A stretch of 63,680 nt of DNA, filler included, from Reticulomyxa filosa (Eukaryota; Protista; Foraminifera), in assembly GCA_000512085.1 (NCBI GenBank). It is 22 parts of 22 records of this genome, joined end to end, with 100 filler letters (N's around TTAATTAATTAA, not from the genome) between each part and the next. Parts side by side here need not be neighbours in the genome. Positions count along the whole stretch, not along the records: positions 1 to 8,194 come from ASPP01000746.1; 21 more parts are not named here. One strand, given 5' to 3'. The number at the start of each line of letters is the position of its first letter. The stretch's first letter is position 1. Of the stretch, positions 1 through 7,855 are shown piece by piece. The position numbers were made by a program, and so were the translations under genes. A model generated the notes under the pieces. It had not been told where the DNA came from. It saw nothing but the letters and a program-made list of their open reading frames with translations, and searched no databases.

Positions 1-909
1 TCGACATATTTGATGATGACACTAGATAACAACAACAAAAAAAACTCTACAAACAAACCTTTGAAAATTTTCTTTATAAAAAAAACTATCAATGATCTGA
101 AAAAGAATTATGATAATATATAATTGTTATCTTTAAATGATGGAGTATTTTGTTTGTTCTTTTCATTTTTATGTGTTTGCACAATAATAATGAAAATCAA
201 AATCAATCCAAATGTAACATTAACTCAACAAGCAGGAGGGATACATTTGTCTTCATTTTAATGATGTTAATTAAGCGAGATTGATATGAAGATTGTCAAT
301 CAAGAAACAGCATCAAATAAAAGTAATTATTTACACAACTGAGCATCTTTCATTCTCAAATAAATGTCATAAAATGATATTACACAAATAAAATTAGTTG
401 CACATATAATATTTTGAATTTTTGTTATTATGCATGAATATAAATAAAAATTGAAATTAAACATTTATATCTTCAAGAAATTTATCTTCTTTTAGTTTTC
501 TCTTTTAAGATTTTTGCTTAATATTCTCTTCAAACACATTTTCATACTTGACTCTATTCTTATTCTTATAATCTCCTTCATCATTTTCACTTCTCATTTT
601 TACTGTCAAATGTAGTCCAGTCCAAATTTTCATTTTTATCAATTTCGGATTTAAGTAGATTTGATACGAAGATAATTGTTTGTCTCAACAACTTTGGTCG
701 GCCATTGTGATTATATATGGCTCTTGCTTCTAATCTTTGCAATGAGCCACATTTCTATACTTAATATCTAATAATTCTTATTACTTTGCATTGGACACGT
801 ACTATCTACAACTAAGTTTAATTGCTTTGTGGTGTCAAAATAAAAGACTATTGGTTAGTAGGAACCAACAGTAAGAAAAGAGAAAATTTTTTACAGAAAA
901 GCAATAGCA

Positions 910-1736
910 ATGAGTCAATTGGATAATCCTCTCGATAGCCGTAGACGTCTAAACAAACTGATATCGCATTTGTTCCCTCGTCAAAGCGATATTTCCGTTA
1001 ATCCGACCAATTACGTCTCATTGTCACAAATGTTGAGCACTCTGCCAGAAACTTTTCTACTATCTCACCAAAAAACTGATAAATAAACAAAAATATATAC
1101 CTAAAGCGAAACTGAATGGAAAAGTCACATTGGCAAAGAGCTCTCTCCAAGTGCATGGATTCAATTGGACCAAGGGAAAATTGACCAATTTTCAAAGTTG
1201 AGAGAAATTGTACTGCATAGAACAGAATTTGGGAAGAACAAGGATAAAAAGAGAGGGGAAGGAGAGTTTAAAATTAATAAATTAAAAAAAACTTTTTATG
1301 TCCACTCTATTAAAAACTGAAAAAAAAAAGCTTGACAGGTGATCACAATTGGATACATAAATATGACGCGAAAGAACGTGGGAGCCCATTTGACGATACT
1401 GTTGCACATGGATTGCTGTCACTGTCGTTTACGCCGACAATGTTGTACGAAGTAATGATGAGTGATTTCCATGTATTGCCTTTGAAAAATATGAAGTCGA
1501 ATGTAAACTATGGATATGACAAAATTCGCTTTATTAGTCCGGTTTTAGCTAACAATAGCATTCGAGGGAAATTTCAAATCAAATCAGTTTCTAAGAATGA
1601 ACATCAAAATGCTGTTCGTGTTGTGTGGATTATTTCGATTGAAACCAAACACAGAGATACCAATCAGATTAAACAAGCTGTACTCGTCGAATATGTCACT
1701 TTATTTATTTATAACTCATTCAAGTCTTCCAAATAA
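910..1736 (+). CDS. MaoC/NodN-like hot-dog fold (R)-enoyl-CoA hydratase, 3 exons (introns ~1032-1106 and 1197-1330), N-terminal PTS2-like signal
   Basis: Spliced translation ...HIGKELSPSAWIQLDQGKIDQFSNLTGDHNWIH...VAHGLLSLS...NYGYDKIRFISPV matches the hydratase-2 motif (D-x-N/Q-W-I-H) and the NodN-type NYG.D++RF..PV motif. GT-AG introns restore the frame. Confidence 0.85.
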
Positions 1737-2113
1737 ATTCTTTTTTTTGCCTCCTCTTTGGAGACTTTTCTGATTTTAATTACTTAAAATTCTTTGATCT
1801 TTTATTGTGGTGCTATTTTTATATTATTTTGTTTTGAGTTCACTTTCGTTTGCTTTGAAGCTTTATTTTTTTCCACTTGCCTCTTCAAATTTCTATTATT
1901 CATATTCTCTTGCACTTGCACATTTTCAGACTTTTAAGACTGAGTCTATGCAATGTTTGTTTTTATTTTGCTTATTATTTATTTTTGATATTTATTCGAA
2001 ACTGAGCAATAAATTTTTATTGATTATTTTGTAATAGTTTTACTGGTTTTTGAACTTTTAAAACTTTGCAAACCGAGGAGAGGAAAGGGGACAACAAGAC
2101 ATTACATAATAAA

Positions 2114-2790
2114 ATGGACAAGCTCTATGAACTCCCTGCAGCAACAATCACCAGACTCATGAAAGAAGCAAATCCCAATGTGACCATTTCAAAAAAAGCA
2201 AAAGAAACCATTTCGAAAGCAGCAGGAATTTTTGCGCTGTACTTGGCATTCAAGTGCGCCAGAAAAAATATAACAATCTATCTCAGAGTTTTTGTCAATG
2301 TTTTTAAAAGAAATGTTGTTTCAAATAAAAAAATGACACAACAATCAACAACATTAAAAAGTGCGAATGAAACAGCCAGAGAACGCAAGCGACAAACTAT
2401 ACAAACAGAAGATGTTATAAACGCACTTCACGACTGTGATTTTGGGAACATGGTCCCCAATGTTGAAGCATTTCTAAATGGTTATGTTTTTGATCCGATT
2501 TCCATGTTATTTTAATTTTTTAAATAATTGATTCACCACGACGCAAATATCTTTTTGTTTTTTTTTATGGACCATAAAAAGACTACTCGAACCAGCAAAA
2601 GGACAAAAAACAAAAGAAGCAAAACACAAACAATGAAAAGAATGGAGACAATGAAAAAGATTTAGAAAAGGAAGAAGAAAAAGGAGAAGTTGAAGAGGCA
2701 GAAAAAGTAGAAGAAGAGGCTGAAGAAGAACAGAAGCAAGACGACAATGACAATGAATTAGCTACACAAGATAACAGCCAAACACTTTGA
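2114..2790 (+). CDS. H2B-like histone-fold protein, CBF/NF-YB family (DNA polymerase epsilon subunit 3 / CHRAC17 / Dpb4-like), 3 exons, acidic tail
   Basis: ELPAATITRLMKEANPNVTISKKAKETISKAAGIFALYL..ANETARERKRQTIQTEDVINAL. Introns 2254-2361 and 2481-2581; Glu-rich C-terminus ends at TGA 2788-2790. Confidence 0.85.
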
Positions 2791-3502
2791 TGTTTTTCAA
2801 TTTTTTTTAAATTTATTTAATTGAGTGAAAAAGGGTACATTACTCCTCACCCTCGCATATTCTTGCAAAGAGTCCATAGCACCTTTGTTATGATTGTATT
2901 GGTCCGGGTATTGTTAGTGAAATCAACGATGTAATTGACAAATGCACACAGAGAATCGATGTTTCTCTTAATGTTAATATAGTCTTGAATTCTCAGTAAT
3001 CTCATTTTACTTATGTCTTGCGTGCGTATTTACCCAGATCCACGCTCTTTTCTAAGCGTCTCTCATCACTATCTTGAAATTGCTTTAATAATCCACATCT
3101 ATATTAAATCCATATTTTCCGTTGTTAGACCCAAGCTTCAAATTTAAGACTTACAAAAACATTTAATTAGATTACTTTTCGGGTAGTGCACTTTTCATGA
3201 AAACGACAGCACAAATCCTGCCGGCACTTCAACCGACATGGCCATGCTTTTGTACTCCAGATTGGAGCGTTTTCTTAGAATTATCCAAAAATAGTGGACG
3301 GAGTGGTTAGGAAGTGTTCTCGTACTAATATTCAACAAGATAGAGTGAATTTTGCAACAACGAAAATTGGCTAAATATCCATTTGAGACGTAAGGTTTGA
3401 TAGATATAGAATGTTGACCGTTTTAAAAAAAAAAACACCACAAAAGAAGAAAAAAGAGCCGTTGTTTGGCTTAATCAAAGTCTCCACAAATAAAATAATT
3501 TT

Positions 3503-6109
3503 TTACTCAGATAATCCCAAGATGGCAGTAGGAATAACAGTACTGAAAAGTTTGTGTCGAAGACCTAGACTGTCTTCTGCCCACAAGTCTATCCGATCAC
3601 CTTTTTTAATTTTGATACCTTTCCATACTAAATCTAAAGCGTCTTTTTTCTTGTCTGTCAAGCACACGCGAAAGATTTCTCCTATTTCCCCGAGTTCCAT
3701 CATAGGACATGTATAGCAAAACACAATTGGATGTTATATGCTCGCAATTTAATAGCCTTCAAAAAAAAAGTCAACCTGAAGTTAATAATTTTTCTGGCAA
3801 AGGCAGTTTTGGTAAATGATCATTGATGAAGAAAGACCACCCTTTTAAGATAATCGAGTCATTCCATTGATTTTGTAGCTCAAATCCGACCCAATCCCCT
3901 TCAAATTGTTGAGTTACACATTCCAACGGAAACACCGTGCGGGAGGTGATTATTGGTCCTTGTACTGACTTGAGTATCTTTGATTCCTACTCAAACCAAA
4001 TCAAAATTTCCATTTGCAACGAGTAAAACTTAAAAAAATGTAGACATGCGCGTATTTCGGGATAGGACCCACTTTTTACTTCGCTAGAACAAGGAAGAGA
4101 AAGGAAAAGAACAAACCAATAAAGTTGAATCTGTTCGACGACGTTTCGATGGACGAACTGGACTTTTGATTTTGTGTTGTTCTTCAAACGTGTCCAATTT
4201 TTGTTTCAGCGACTTTGTGACAGTTATTATTGTAATATACATAAATCGTAGTTAACATGCCGAAGATTACAATGCGTGTACACAAAAGAGCATAAAAATG
4301 GTATTAGCATTTTTTTGTTTTTTAAAGCAAACCTCAATTTCAGCACGCAAATCTAAATTGGTTTTTTGCAAAGTGAAATGATCGTCGCGCAGTTGTCGAT
4401 AATTTTTTTGTGCATCGTCAGCACTATCTTTCACGCGTTTGATCTCCTCTTTTGCTTGTTCTTTTTGTTTTTTCAGTTCATTTTCCAGTGCTTCGCGTAA
4501 AGGTATCTATTCAATGATTATCCGATTGATTGTTGATTATATGCAATTGCGATATGTTAATATATACATATATGTATATATACATCAAGTATATTGAATG
4601 TTTCCTCGACAAAACTTGATAGTCCAATTCCTTTTTAATTCTGTCTCTGTCTTGTGAAGTCTTCAACAAATCTCCTTGTAGTTCAGCTAACTCTTTCTTT
4701 TGTGCCTCTACTGTGCTATTCAAATCTTCCAATTGTTTTTCATAGCTGTTTTGAATATCTTTCATTTGCTGGCGAAACACTTCGTCCGTTTCATTTTTCA
4801 ATTTATTGTACTGGTCATCTCTTTCTTGCAATTTCTTATTTTTTTTTTTTTTTTTTTCCAAAAAAAGAAATGCATTGAACAAAGCGGTAAAACAAGACAA
4901 GCAAAACAATACCTCCGCAAGCTTTGCAGCCAATTCTTGTTCTTTTTTGGTATTGACTTCGTTCGTGTTTGATTGAAGATGTTTGTTTTCATCGGTCAAT
5001 TTTTGGTTTTGCCCCTCCAGTGCTTTAAGTTGCAATTCATAGGCATCTTTAATATTTTGGTTATCTGCCAACGCCTTTTCATTTGATTATTTGTATTGTT
5101 TATTTTCAAAATAATTAATGTAATGGTGTTTTTTTGTTTGTATGAAAAAAACTTTGTCTTTTTCTCGCAAGGCTTGTTCCCTTTCATTTCTCAATTTGGA
5201 ATTGTCTTTTTTTAAATTGTCATTTTTGGCCTGCAATTCTTTCGTTTCTGTGTCCAGTTCTGCCGCTTTGCTAGTATCCAATAAAAAATTTTTCAAACCA
5301 ATTTCAAATTTTTTTTCAACAAAAAAAAAAACAAAACAAAAAAAACAAACTCTTGCAAAAGGCGAATATCCGCTTTCGCATTGGCCAATTCTTGATTTTT
5401 TATCTCTTCTTTGGCCAAAAATGTTTGGGCCAACTCTTTGAGCGCCTTATTTCCTTGTTCACGTAAATCATTGGTGACGTCGGGTTTCACATGTTCCCCC
5501 TTGTCTCCTGTGTGATTCAACTTCGAACCAAACACCGAAAAGATATTTTCCACACGTAAGTTGATCTCATGCAATTGTTCCTTTTCCCATAATAAGTCTT
5601 CCATCCCCTCAATTCGTTTTACATCTTCTGTTACTCCTTGTTCTTGCTCTTCACGTATTGGTGTTCGCTCTTGAGGTAACAAAGGAGCCCGTCCTTCATT
5701 TTCTGTTCTTTTTTCTGTTTGTTCCGTTGCTATCAATTTTTTCCCCCCCCCCCCCTTCCTATTTATTTGTTTTTGCAACCCCTTTTTTTTCTCTCTCACA
5801 TACACTCGGACTTTACTTTGGCTTAGTAAGCATTTTGTGTTGCTATCTAAACTTTTGGCGGGAGAAATGACATTAGGGTCGGGCAGGCTCTCGACGGGTT
5901 TATTTTCCACAGGAGTGCTTGCTTTTTGATGCTTAATTCTTTTGGTTGAGTGGCCTCGGCGCCTATCAAATTCACACGCATCAAAATAAAAAAGTTCCGA
6001 TTTTTTTTTTTGCATCGCATTTATTTTTTTTTTTACCAAGAATAATATATAATAAACAAAATTTTCAATTTAGAAAGAAAAATAAAAAAAGAAACTGTTA
6101 CATTTGCAT
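3503..6109 (-). CDS. Lamin-like intermediate filament protein (head, coiled-coil rod, NLS, lamin tail domain), about 10 exons
   Basis: Coil-1A motif EKEQLHEINLR (~5554-5586); coil-2 segment KLAEKLQERDDQY; rod end LDLRAEIESLKQKLDTFEE; NLS PSKRRRTD; LTD-like FELQNQWNDSIILKGW...LLTSGEIFRV...DLVWK. The start ATG at 6109 is inferred through a short first exon. Confidence 0.75.
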
Positions 6110-7855
6110 GATTTTTGTTTTTGTTTGTTTTGTTTTTTGGGAGTGTTTCTTTTCACAACTTGCAAAGAATTACAATATTTAATTATTTATTTACTTTGCC
6201 TTCTTTTACAAACACTCTAGAGTTCAGTAATAACACATAGAAAATTGACTATCTAAACTCCAATTTCCCAGACAGGAGAAAAAGCTCTTTCTGTGTTGTC
6301 CCCCAAGTACCTAAGGCAAATTAAGATAAAAATGACAAAGGGTTTTGATATTTCTTTTTTGTCAAGTAAAAATAAAATTTTTAAGTGTTAGTAGAGATAT
6401 TTTAATTTTAAATTTATGCTGGTAGTGTAGTATAAATCATCAGTAGAATCATAATTGACTCTGAAGTTGCATCAACTTTTTTTGGTAACATTGCGATTAT
6501 TTTCTATTTTAGCTTTTTGGTTTTCCTAGAATAGAGTACTTTCTGCAGTAGAGAGGCCGACGATGCAAAATTGCAAGTGGCTCTATGTAATTACTATCAA
6601 TCACATATATAAGCTTCTAAGCAAAACGTTGCAAATTACATCAGAGGTTTTGAGAAACAGCAACACAACAGGACAACCAAGTGGTGTAATAAATCTGCTG
6701 ATACTTTGACAAAAAAAGAATTAACAGTTTTTCCACAGTAATATGTATCAATATAATACGAACAATATTCCTTTTTTTAAATTAAAAAATAAATATTTTA
6801 ATTCTGCAAGACATACCATGACAATATTTTTGATAAAAAAAGAAAAGCTGTTGTGTGGGCGCAGACAGTTGTAATTTCTTTGGCTTTGTGGTACTGTGTG
6901 CTGTTAGTTTTGTGCCAATTTTGTTAGTCATGTCAACTCGGTCGTGGCAATGTATGTGACGGAATTAGGAGCTTATCTGCAGGAGCAAGTGAGCCTGGAA
7001 CATCTAGCAATAAACCTGAAACCAACTTTCCATTAAATCGCATTACCACATTGGCCGGAGTTGTTGCAGACGAGAAAGTTAAGTCGTTCAGTGTTTTATT
7101 AAGAATCATTTTTCACATTTTTTTGGTTGCGGCAATATTCATTATTATTAATTTTTTAATAACTTTATTACCACATCTGCCTCACTCAAATTGCTTTTCT
7201 TGACAGTATTATAATCTAAAAATTGGTTCAGTTTTTGAAAAACTATCCTCTTGTGTCAGTTCGTCGAGCAACAATAAACCACTCAAGATACTCATTGCAA
7301 ATAAAAAGAAATCATATATTGAAGAATAAAATGAGGAGTCACTCATAAAAAAGACATTGAGATGTTTTTGCGCACATTAAAAAAAAAGAAAAAGCAGAAA
7401 TAAATTGTTATGATTTGCTTTCCACATTCAATCAGAGCATAATATGAAATATTACAAATATTAATATCTAATAAAAAATCAAATGCTTGTAATTCTATTT
7501 CATGGGAGATAAATATCTTTGTTTATTTGAAAAACAAAAAAACGCAGAGACAATCAGATAACAAATAAAAAAAGCGATGTATTTCTCAGGACGCAAGACA
7601 CAACCCCATAGTCATTGAAATAGCTATTGAGACCAAACCTCAACTCATACAATAGAGTACGTCACAAAACTGAACGCAAATAATTTGAATGAGATTAGAG
7701 ATGCAGTTTTCTTGGCTGTGTTTCTTTTGACCACGTTTTTGTTTTTTTAAAAAAATTTTGTGATTCCCCAATCTTTTTTTTGTAACTTTTGGAGATAAAA
7801 CTTGAGGTAATTTTGAATCTCTCCCAATCTCATTTTCTTGGGATCATATTGAGAG

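What the first reader, a model, noticed from the sequence alone, without database searches (positions are those of the whole stretch)
3503..6109. Hidden nuclear lamin homolog in a (probably foraminiferan) protist
Seen: the ORF track splits this region into unrelated pieces, but GT-AG splicing joins them into one protein. It has a head with CDK consensus sites (SPAK, TPIR) and a rod of roughly 320 aa. The rod starts WEKEQLHEINLRVENIF, contains KLAEKLQERDDQY..IQNSYEKQL, and ends TNLDLRAEIESLKQKLDTFEE. A CDK site and NLS follow (KSPVRPSKRRR), then FELQNQWNDSIILKGW..LPEKLLTSGEIFRV..DLVWK..EDSLG. Known: lamin A has QEKEDLQELNDRLAVYI, RLADALQELRAQHE, KLALDMEIHAYRKLLEGEE, KKRK and an Ig-fold tail containing DLVWK, in the same order. 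Protist lamins exist (e.g. Dictyostelium NE81). Inference: this is a divergent true lamin, implying a CDK-regulated lamina in this lineage. I cannot tell whether this particular gene has been described.
Basis: partly seen in the sequence, partly recalled or inferred. Interest (0 to 1): 0.85.

Follow-up and report, generated by a model that had tools for sequence, protein, structure and literature searches.

The report
Divergent lamin-like gene in Reticulomyxa
This is a real nine-exon gene of the foraminiferan Reticulomyxa filosa, mislabelled in public databases, that encodes a lamin-like protein from a second, very divergent family next to the lamins already reported for this organism.

Summary
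On the minus strand, nine GT-AG exons (6015..3503) join into a 578-aa frame with no stops. Exons 2-9 map in order, end to end, onto intron-free environmental relatives and onto four paralogs in the same genome.

The organism is Reticulomyxa filosa. The gene is already deposited as ETO36362.1, misnamed "viral A-type inclusion protein", with introns read through and exon 9 missing.

The tail is a lamin-tail-domain (LTD) Ig-like fold. An exon-8 profile finds true LTD proteins (E down to 3e-14). An AlphaFold model of a relative's tail matches human lamin Ig-folds first (Z 6.1-7.8), and LTD clusters in the ESM Atlas.

The rod has IF-like segments in the relative's model: helices of 35, 111 and 156 residues. 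It shows no significant sequence match to Pfam Filament or to solved IF/lamin chains.

An invariant SP site and a KRRR-type nuclear signal follow the rod. Five relatives and two paralogs end in CFVM/CFLM (CaaX), in the paralogs on an unannotated mini-exon. This copy shows only a degenerate remnant with Ser for Cys.

Koreny & Field (2016) list five other R. filosa proteins as lamins. So this is a second lamin-like family, not the first evidence of a foraminiferal lamina. No RNA or localisation data were available.

The parts
5817..6015 (-). Exon 1 (ATG 6015-6013). Basic, Ser/Pro-rich start of the head; contains SPAK (5854-5865), a CDK-consensus S-P-x-K.
   Evidence: Same start as public model P0002. 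Exon 1 matched nothing in the paralog loci or in relatives P0005/P0034, so this part is the least certain.
5730..5816 (-). Putative intron 1 (GTAAAG..GATAG, 87 nt, in frame, holds a G13 run).
   Evidence: GC is 0.41, the same as the exons. The public model reads through it. Unverified either way.
5351..5729 (-). Exon 2: end of the head (TPIR at 5653-5664), rod start with the family-invariant WEKEQL..I.LR motif (5539-5589), a Gly/Pro-containing linker (5473-5529) and the start of the second helix.
   Evidence: Maps to P0005 residues 2-133. The AlphaFold model of P0005 gives a 35-residue first helix followed by a 9-residue break.
5153..5270 (-). Exon 3, coiled-coil (second helix).
   Evidence: 64% identical to P0005 135-173 and abuts exon 2 through the split codon.
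4913..5074 (-). Exon 4: end of the second helix and the variable linker region.
4616..4834 (-). Exon 5, coiled-coil (third helix).
   Evidence: maps to P0005 227-296.
4333..4506 (-). Exon 6: coiled-coil up to the end-of-rod stretch ...NLDLRAEIE.
   Evidence: Contiguous with exon 7 in paralog C19119 (L014 4797-5060), which confirms the junction.
4117..4212 (-). Exon 7: rod end (DTFEE, 4180-4194), SPVR CDK-consensus site (4153-4164) and KRRR basic NLS (4135-4146).
   Evidence: S-P and K-R-R are invariant in the four R. filosa copies aligned and kept in every relative that covers this region.
3776..3986 (-). Exon 8: first half of the LTD (Ig-like) tail, with the core motif GFELQNQWNDSIILKGW (3837-3887).
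   Evidence: Alignment. The exon-8 profile hits true LTD proteins. The language-model search returns only LTD clusters. hhalign against the tail of a listed R. filosa lamin gives 88% probability.
3503..3681 (-). Exon 9: second half of the LTD tail (DLVWK at 3620-3634, GDRIDLWAEDSLG at 3563-3601). TAA stop at 3505-3503, overlapped by a possible GA|GTAAAA donor.
   Evidence: Missing from the public model P0002. There are no differences from the 97% copy L008, against 3.7 per 100 nt downstream.
3436..3465 (-). Degenerate remnant of the terminal CaaX mini-exon. It reads ...TA LFS SFVV where paralogs read T[AP][DE][AS]CFVM-stop: Cys is replaced by Ser, and the stop is displaced by a T11 run.
   Evidence: The alignment is short and ambiguous, so this is a tentative reading.

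Best explanation
Window 6015..3503 (minus strand) is one nine-exon gene of Reticulomyxa filosa, the public ETO36362.1. It encodes a protein of about 578 aa from a small, divergent lamin-like family. That family has at least five loci in this genome plus a handful of environmental relatives.

Shown:
- A disordered basic head carrying S/T-P-x-K/R sites.
- A rod that is helical in three segments (35, 111 and 156 residues in the model of the 46-62% identical relative P0005), separated by two short linkers.
- Directly after the rod, an invariant Ser-Pro and a KRRR/KKRRR cluster.
- An LTD-type Ig-like beta-sandwich tail.

Inferred:
- The rod forms parallel coiled-coil dimers that assemble into filaments.
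- The basic cluster imports the protein into the nucleus.
- Phosphorylation of the Ser-Pro sites by mitotic CDK loosens assembly, as in lamins.
- Family members ending in CFVM/CFLM are farnesylated and sit on the inner nuclear membrane.

This particular copy ends ...GLSE and has only a Cys-to-Ser remnant of the CaaX mini-exon. It would therefore be a non-lipidated member, either nucleoplasmic or recruited by co-assembly with CaaX-bearing paralogs or with the lamins already reported for this species. The family most likely descends from an old duplication of a lamin gene rather than from an independent fusion.
For: Gene structure.

Identity and organism.

LTD tail:
- A profile of exon 8 from five paralogs, searched against 1.84 billion proteins, finds seven family members and then 16 non-family proteins at E 3e-14 to 7e-4. 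All eight of these that I tested are strong Pfam LTD proteins.
- Pfam LTD is the top hit, and for four of them the only hit, on five joined tails (E 3.9e-4 to 0.063), always mapping to profile positions 25-86/90.
- The ESM feature search on exon 8 returns only LTD clusters.
- The AlphaFold model of the P0005 tail has pLDDT 76.9 and pTM 0.71.
- In Foldseek against the PDB, 16 of the top 17 matches are lamin A/C, B1 or B2 Ig-folds.
- In VIA-align the top 12 are all lamins at Z 6.1-7.8, and the next match is at or below 5.9.
- All nine rows of the Atlas shape search are LTD-bearing clusters or CotH clusters, at TM 0.55-0.63.

Rod segmentation.

SP site plus NLS conserved.

CaaX in relatives and on paralog mini-exons. 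The tail of a listed R. filosa lamin, P0038, also ends in CaaX (CLFM) and aligns with this family's LTD core.
Against: - There is no significant sequence link between the rod and IF proteins or lamins. Pfam Filament gives E 0.87-0.97 at about 9.5 bits, against a cut-off of 40. PDB profile searches give keratin 5 at E 0.036-0.07, lamin A/C at 0.9 and vimentin at 1.2. The coil-1A motif profile finds only unrelated enzymes.
- Pfam LTD scores are 14-21 bits, below the 34.3-bit cut-off. The tail profile finds no lamin by sequence in the PDB.
- The second helix is 111 residues. From my own knowledge, untested here, lamin coil 1B is about 143.
- This copy has no CaaX.
- There are no RNA, localisation or assembly data. 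The structure models are of a relative, not of this protein, because the joined model could not be handed to the tools.
Confidence: 0.68

Rival explanations
1. Convergent look-alike. An LTD domain, common in bacteria and present in non-lamin eukaryotic proteins, was fused independently to an unrelated coiled-coil protein. The family would then share no ancestry with lamins.
For: The rod has no significant similarity to IF proteins or lamins. All non-family sequence hits of the exon-8 profile that were tested are LTD proteins with several LTD stretches (2 to 10 each), not lamins. R. filosa also has an LTD-like domain in a non-coiled-coil surface-type protein on C4645. Koreny & Field raise a prokaryotic origin for the LTD.
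Against: The full ordered set of lamin features recurs: head with S/T-P sites, a 35-residue first helix, linkers, a Ser-Pro site, an NLS, an LTD and a CaaX ending in Met. The already listed lamins of the same species have the same order and also end in CaaX-Met. Proteins with many LTD repeats out-score single-domain lamins for statistical reasons alone.
Confidence: 0.12
2. Of lamin ancestry but with a non-lamina job. The family, or at least this CaaX-less copy, works as a cytoplasmic or nucleoplasmic filament or scaffold. This would parallel the lamin-to-cytoplasmic-IF shift in animals and the second lamin copy of ichthyosporeans.
For: This copy has lost the CaaX cysteine. Two further paralogs show no CaaX mini-exon within the 450 nt searched downstream of exon 9. 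The total helical rod length (324 aa in P0005) and the end-to-end but non-significant alignment to the vimentin rod are closer to a short-1B IF than to a lamin. Koreny & Field describe such divergent duplicates in other protists.
Against: The basic KRRR cluster and the adjacent Ser-Pro are kept in this copy and in every family member that covers the region. That argues for nuclear import.
Confidence: 0.13
3. Decaying duplicate. This copy is a pseudogene, or is on its way to becoming one, and only the CaaX-bearing paralogs are functional.
For: The C-terminus diverges from the family consensus and the CaaX remnant is degenerate. No expression data were available.
Against: All nine exons are open and in frame, with intact GT-AG sites. 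All family-invariant residues of the LTD core, the NLS and the rod start are kept. Exon 9 has no difference from the 97% copy, while the downstream DNA differs at 3.7 per 100 nt.
Confidence: 0.06

Closest known systems
Metazoan nuclear lamins (type V intermediate filaments; lamin A/C, B1, B2)
   Same: The order of parts is the same: head with CDK-type S/T-P sites, segmented alpha-helical rod with a 35-residue first helix, Ser-Pro site, basic NLS, Ig-like LTD, and (in relatives and paralogs) a CaaX ending in Met. The modelled tail matches lamin Ig-folds best in the PDB.
   Different: The rod sequence is not detectably IF (Pfam Filament E about 0.9). The second helix is 111 residues rather than about 143 (the lamin figure is from my own knowledge). 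The Ser-Pro site and the NLS are only a few residues apart. The LTD is at 12-17% identity to lamin Ig-folds and below the Pfam cut-off. This copy has no CaaX.
Foraminiferal lamins already reported (Koreny & Field 2016: R. filosa ETO28743, ETO24379, ETO09514, ETO02958, ETO17410; Ammonia, Elphidium)
   Same: Same organism and same domain order. Their tail P0038 (which matches the listed ETO17410 sequence) has an LTD and ends in CLFM. The LTD core ..LELQN....P..LKG..L aligns with this family (hhalign 88% for the exon-8 profile, 51% for the whole tail).
   Different: Only about 33 columns align. The listed lamins keep the classic rod-end motif (..QLDNEIALYR..), have a long spacer between NLS and LTD, and score 29.5 bits on Pfam LTD. 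This family scores 14-21 bits, has its own invariant motifs, and is absent from that paper's table.
Dictyostelium NE81 and other protist lamin-like proteins
   Same: These are non-metazoan proteins accepted as lamins on the basis of rod, CDK site, NLS and CaaX, according to the papers found.
   Different: No sequence comparison was run here. The resemblance is at the level of architecture only.
Prokaryotic LTD (PF00932) proteins
   Same: The tail fold and the core sequence motif are shared. These are the only non-family sequence hits.
   Different: Pfam found only LTD, enzyme or secretion-type domains in the eight tested; none was checked for a coiled-coil rod, NLS or CaaX context. Several carry many LTD stretches.

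Membership tests
Nuclear lamin / type V intermediate filament | Central alpha-helical rod split into coil 1A, L1, 1B, L12 and coil 2 | tested here: met
   The AlphaFold model of relative P0005 has helices 46-80 (35 aa), 90-200 (111) and 214-369 (156), with breaks of 9 and 13 residues. The window's exons 2-7 map collinearly on it. The 1B length is not the lamin-type value of about 143 (that figure is my own knowledge).
Nuclear lamin / type V intermediate filament | Sequence match to the IF rod model (Pfam Filament PF00038) | tested here: not met
   No hit exon by exon. E 0.87 and 0.97, about 9.5 bits against a cut-off of 40, on the rods of P0005 and P0006.
Nuclear lamin / type V intermediate filament | IF consensus motifs at the start and end of the rod | tested here: inconclusive
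   By eye, EKEQLHEINLRVENIF resembles the lamin coil-1A start. A profile of this region (A9) found no IF or lamin chain at E<=10 in the PDB.
Nuclear lamin / type V intermediate filament | Basic NLS between rod and tail | tested here: met
   KRRR at 4135-4146. K-R-R is invariant among the R. filosa copies and kept in all relatives covering the region. Sequence level only; import was not tested.
Nuclear lamin / type V intermediate filament | CDK-type S/T-P sites flanking the rod | tested here: met
   SPAK and TPIR in the head, SPVR right after the rod. The post-rod S-P is kept in every member covering the region. Head sites are not positionally conserved. Phosphorylation was not tested.
Nuclear lamin / type V intermediate filament | C-terminal lamin tail domain with Ig-like fold | tested here: met
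   The model is of relative P0005, which is 62% identical over exon 8 and 56% over exon 9.
Nuclear lamin / type V intermediate filament | C-terminal CaaX box (B-type lamins) | tested here: not met
   This gene ends ...GLSE-stop, and downstream there is only a Ser-for-Cys remnant. CaaX is present in five relatives (CFVM/CFLM) and on mini-exons of paralogs C19119 and C21709.
Nuclear lamin / type V intermediate filament | Reverse search returns lamins as best hits (criterion of Koreny & Field 2016) | tested here: inconclusive
   By sequence, no. By structure, yes for the tail. A BLAST against metazoan proteomes could not be run.
Nuclear lamin / type V intermediate filament | Location at the inner face of the nuclear envelope and filament assembly | not testable with these tools
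   Needs microscopy and in vitro assembly.
Pfam LTD (PF00932) | Score at or above the gathering cut-off (34.3 bits) | tested here: not met
   14.1-21.2 bits on five joined tails and nothing on single exons. The tail of an accepted R. filosa lamin, P0038, also stays below the cut-off at 29.5 bits, so the cut-off is too strict for this lineage.

The most novel reading that the evidence does not exclude
Foraminifera carry a second, deeply diverged lamin lineage that has split into lipid-anchored (CaaX) and non-anchored copies such as this one. That would be a division of labour like B-type and A-type lamins, or an early step towards non-lamina filaments, arising independently of animals.
Probability: 0.2. 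Interest if true: 0.65.

Novelty: new variant of a known kind. Interest (0 to 1): 0.5.

Why it matters
Lamins outside animals were recognised only recently. In Rhizaria the reported duplicates were described as "fairly similar" to each other. A separate family that keeps every lamin hallmark yet escapes the Filament and LTD models would matter for two reasons.

- It would show that lamin genes diversified strongly in a protist lineage known for very large, numerous or dimorphic nuclei.
- It would show that surveys based on standard domain models under-count lamin relatives.

It also corrects four public annotations ("viral A-type inclusion protein" twice, "GTPase", and a "hypothetical protein"). 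And it reveals 3' mini-exons encoding CaaX that the gene models missed.

Tried and rejected
- Pfam on single exons gave only generic coiled-coil noise and no Filament or LTD. This test is under-powered: the split LTD of an accepted R. filosa lamin also fails it.
- PF00932 scanned over the whole genome did not hit the window.
- No RNA runs were listed, so splice junctions could not be read from reads and read laying was not used.
- PDB sequence searches with profiles of exon 8, exon 9, the whole tail, the whole protein and the coil-1A motif gave no significant lamin or IF hit.
- The ESM feature search on exon 9 found nothing usable.
- The protein search with P0005 brought back only family members, none annotated as a lamin.
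- A literature search for the accession numbers found nothing.
- A reading in which GA|GTAAAA at the stop codon splices to a downstream WCFFF-stop was rejected, because the frames do not fit.
- Complex prediction was not run. A coiled-coil dimer score would not separate a lamin from any other coiled-coil protein.
- The joined spliced protein was not sent to any search or folding tool. Only its length and frame were computed in a script. Exons were searched one by one, and stored public relatives stood in for the whole protein.
Full report
**1. What is in the sequence**

The feature lies on the minus strand. Nine exons joined by eight GT..AG introns of 78-130 nt give a 1737-nt frame with no internal stop, 578 aa. 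The exons are:

- Exon 1: 6015-5817
- Exon 2: 5729-5351
- Exon 3: 5270-5153
- Exon 4: 5074-4913
- Exon 5: 4834-4616
- Exon 6: 4506-4333
- Exon 7: 4212-4117
- Exon 8: 3986-3776
- Exon 9: 3681-3503

Introns 2-8 are AT-richer (GC 0.17-0.36) than the exons (0.34-0.41). Intron 1 is not (0.41). It is in frame and holds a G13 run, so it remains optional.

**2. Is it one gene?**

No RNA run was listed for this stretch, so the evidence is comparative.

- The window is contig C746 of a 101.9-Mb assembly in 50,809 contigs.
- Searching that genome with exons 8 and 9 found four paralogous loci (C21709, C19119, C20124, C5104) and a 97% identical 1-kb copy (C50528).
- tblastn of every exon shows exons 2-9 in the same order in C19119 and C5104. 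In C21709, exons 3, 4 and 6-9 appear in order before that short contig ends.
- In C19119, exons 6 and 7 are contiguous. This confirms that junction to the residue.
- A profile search and a protein search then recovered intron-free relatives from metagenome or metatranscriptome-type contigs: P0005 523 aa, P0034 560 aa, P0035 499 aa, and others.
- P0005 sits on a 1924-nt contig as a single ORF, with untranslated sequence on both sides.
- Exon-by-exon blastp places the exons on P0005 at 2-133, 135-173, 175 onward, 227-296, 301-356, 357-388, 389-456 and 460-516. The split codons fill the one-residue gaps.

The rod and the tail therefore belong to one gene. Exon 1 had no match in the paralog loci or in P0005/P0034.

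**3. Identity**

The exact look-up names the organism and the gene. P0002 is ETO36362.1 / X6PFC5_RETFI of Reticulomyxa filosa, called "viral A-type inclusion protein", on a contig of 8194 nt. That model reads through several introns and stops at ...LLTSG, so it lacks exon 9. The paralogs are named "viral A-type inclusion protein, partial", "GTPase" and "hypothetical protein". The gene is annotated, but wrongly.

**4. The tail is a lamin tail domain**

Single exons give no Pfam hit. However, the split LTD of an accepted R. filosa lamin fails the same test, so that negative carries little weight. The positive evidence is:

- **Profile search.** A profile of exon 8 from the five R. filosa loci, run against 1.84 billion proteins, found seven family members and then 16 other proteins at E 3e-14 to 7e-4. 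All eight of these that I scanned are strong PF00932 proteins (E 4e-35 to 3e-183 for seven of them, 7.7e-25 for P0021).
- **Pfam on joined tails.** On five tails already joined by other people's models or transcripts, LTD is the top hit, and for four of them the only hit. E is 3.9e-4 to 0.063, at 14-21 bits, always on profile positions 25-86/90.
- **Language-model search.** The feature search on exon 8 alone lists only LTD clusters, at score 0.83. This is a lead, not proof.
- **Structure model.** AlphaFold on the P0005 tail, using a family-only alignment of six sequences, gives a beta-sandwich with pLDDT 76.9 and pTM 0.71.
- **Foldseek against the PDB.** Human and mouse lamin A/C, B1 and B2 Ig-folds take 16 of the first 17 places, with E from 2.9e-4 and target-normalised TM about 0.5-0.6.
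- **VIA-align.** The first 12 matches are all lamins at Z 6.1-7.8, with about 100 residues aligned at about 3 Å. The next unrelated fold is at Z 5.9 or below.
- **ESM Atlas shape search.** All nine rows are LTD-bearing or CotH clusters, at TM 0.55-0.63.

The scores stay under Pfam's 34.3-bit cut-off. So does the tail of a listed R. filosa lamin, P0038, at 29.5 bits.

**5. The rod**

Exons 3-6 are rich in charged residues, nearly free of Pro and Gly, and show heptad-like periodicity. The full-length model of P0005 shows:

- a disordered head, residues 1-45
- helices 46-80 (35 residues), 90-200 (111) and 214-369 (156)
- a disordered stretch, 370-399, carrying the Ser-Pro site and the basic cluster
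- then the beta-sandwich tail

A 35-residue first helix followed by a short linker is the IF pattern. The 111-residue second helix is neither the lamin nor the vertebrate cytoplasmic value (those reference figures are from my own knowledge).

By sequence the rod is not demonstrably IF:

- Pfam Filament gives E 0.87-0.97.
- PDB profile searches give keratin 5 at E 0.036-0.07, lamin A/C at 0.9, and vimentin at 1.2. The vimentin match is collinear with its rod but not significant.
- The coil-1A motif profile finds only unrelated enzymes.

Koreny & Field note that rods alone often fail to identify lamins.

**6. Signals**

- Directly after the rod, the four R. filosa copies aligned share ..KI.SP...KRR... 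The relatives that cover the region keep it. In this gene it reads SPVR plus KRRR (4164-4135).
- The head of this gene has SPAK and TPIR, but head sites are not positionally conserved.
- Five relatives end in CFVM or CFLM.
- In paralogs C19119 and C21709 I found a 24-nt terminal mini-exon behind an ..ATAG acceptor. It encodes TADACFVM-stop and TPESCFVM-stop, and the public models miss it.
- In this gene, exon 9 ends GLSE-stop. The homologous downstream stretch (3465-3436) reads Ser where the paralogs have Cys, and it runs into a T11 tract. The 97% copy has the same Ser. I read this as loss of CaaX in this copy, tentatively, because the alignment is short.
- Exon 9 has no difference from the 97% copy, while the downstream DNA differs at 3.7 per 100 nt. 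That speaks weakly for constraint.

**7. Relation to what is known**

- Kollmar 2015 found a single rhizarian lamin, from Corallomyxa.
- Koreny & Field 2016 found lamins in Rhizaria. Their supplementary table lists R. filosa ETO28743, ETO24379, ETO09514, ETO02958 and ETO17410.
- Six motifs of the present gene are absent from that file, and so are accession numbers beginning ETO36 and ETO31.
- No paper in the library cites the four protein accessions (two of them also as UniProt ids) that I searched for.
- P0038, which matches the listed ETO17410 sequence, carries an NLS, an LTD and a CLFM end. It aligns with the new family only over the 33-column LTD core: hhalign probability 88% with the exon-8 profile and 51% with the whole tail.

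R. filosa therefore has its already reported lamins and, beside them, this divergent family with the same layout.

**8. Verdict**

It is a lamin-like protein with a proven LTD tail and lamin-type signals. Rod homology, nuclear location and filament formation are all inferred.
- It is not the first sign of a lamina in this lineage.
- This copy lacks the lipid anchor of its relatives.
- The joined spliced protein was not searched or folded. Exons were searched singly, and stored relatives stood in for the whole.

Noticed in passing
L014 (C19119) about 5640-5670 (+); L004 (C21709) about 730-760 (-): Terminal mini-exons of 24 nt plus stop, behind ..ATAG acceptors, encode TADACFVM and TPESCFVM (CaaX). 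The one public model seen for these two paralogs, ETO12114.1 (C21709), misses its mini-exon and ends ...PGFVS; no public model for the C19119 paralog was identified.
   Followed up: partly
L008 (C50528:1-1000) vs window 2712-3721: A 1-kb contig is 97.1% identical to the 3' end of the gene and its downstream DNA. It is either an allele or a very recent duplicate. All 29 differences lie downstream of exon 9.
   Followed up: partly
window 1332-1736 (+): A 134-aa ORF has a MaoC-like dehydratase domain (PF01575, E 2.7e-13). It is probably one exon of a neighbouring gene.
   Followed up: no
window 2066-2515 (+): An ORF has a histone-fold CBFD_NFYB_HMF match (PF00808, E 6e-12, two stretches), like NF-YB or Dr1. 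The middle of the ORF looks like a read-through intron.
   Followed up: no
L017 (C4645) 3226-3807 and 3900-6344 (+): A weak LTD-like match (23 bits) lies in a non-coiled-coil ORF, next to an 814-aa Pro/Thr-repeat ORF with a C-terminal hydrophobic stretch. This is an LTD-only, surface-type protein and not a lamin.
   Followed up: no
L001 (C16680) / P0038: The tail of a listed R. filosa lamin (its sequence matches the ETO17410 entry of Koreny & Field) ends in CLFM (CaaX). It scores only 29.5 bits on Pfam LTD, below the gathering cut-off.
   Followed up: yes
window 5745-5757 (+ strand C13) and 3423-3433 (minus-strand T11): Long homopolymer runs lie inside putative intron 1 and beside the CaaX remnant. 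The T run differs in length between the two near-identical copies, so reading frames near them should be treated with care.
   Followed up: partly
P0006 = ETO31167.1 (C5104): This family member is named "GTPase" in the public record. No GTPase domain was found by Pfam: the full-length protein gave no family at E<=0.01, and its rod and tail parts gave none at E<=10.
   Followed up: partly
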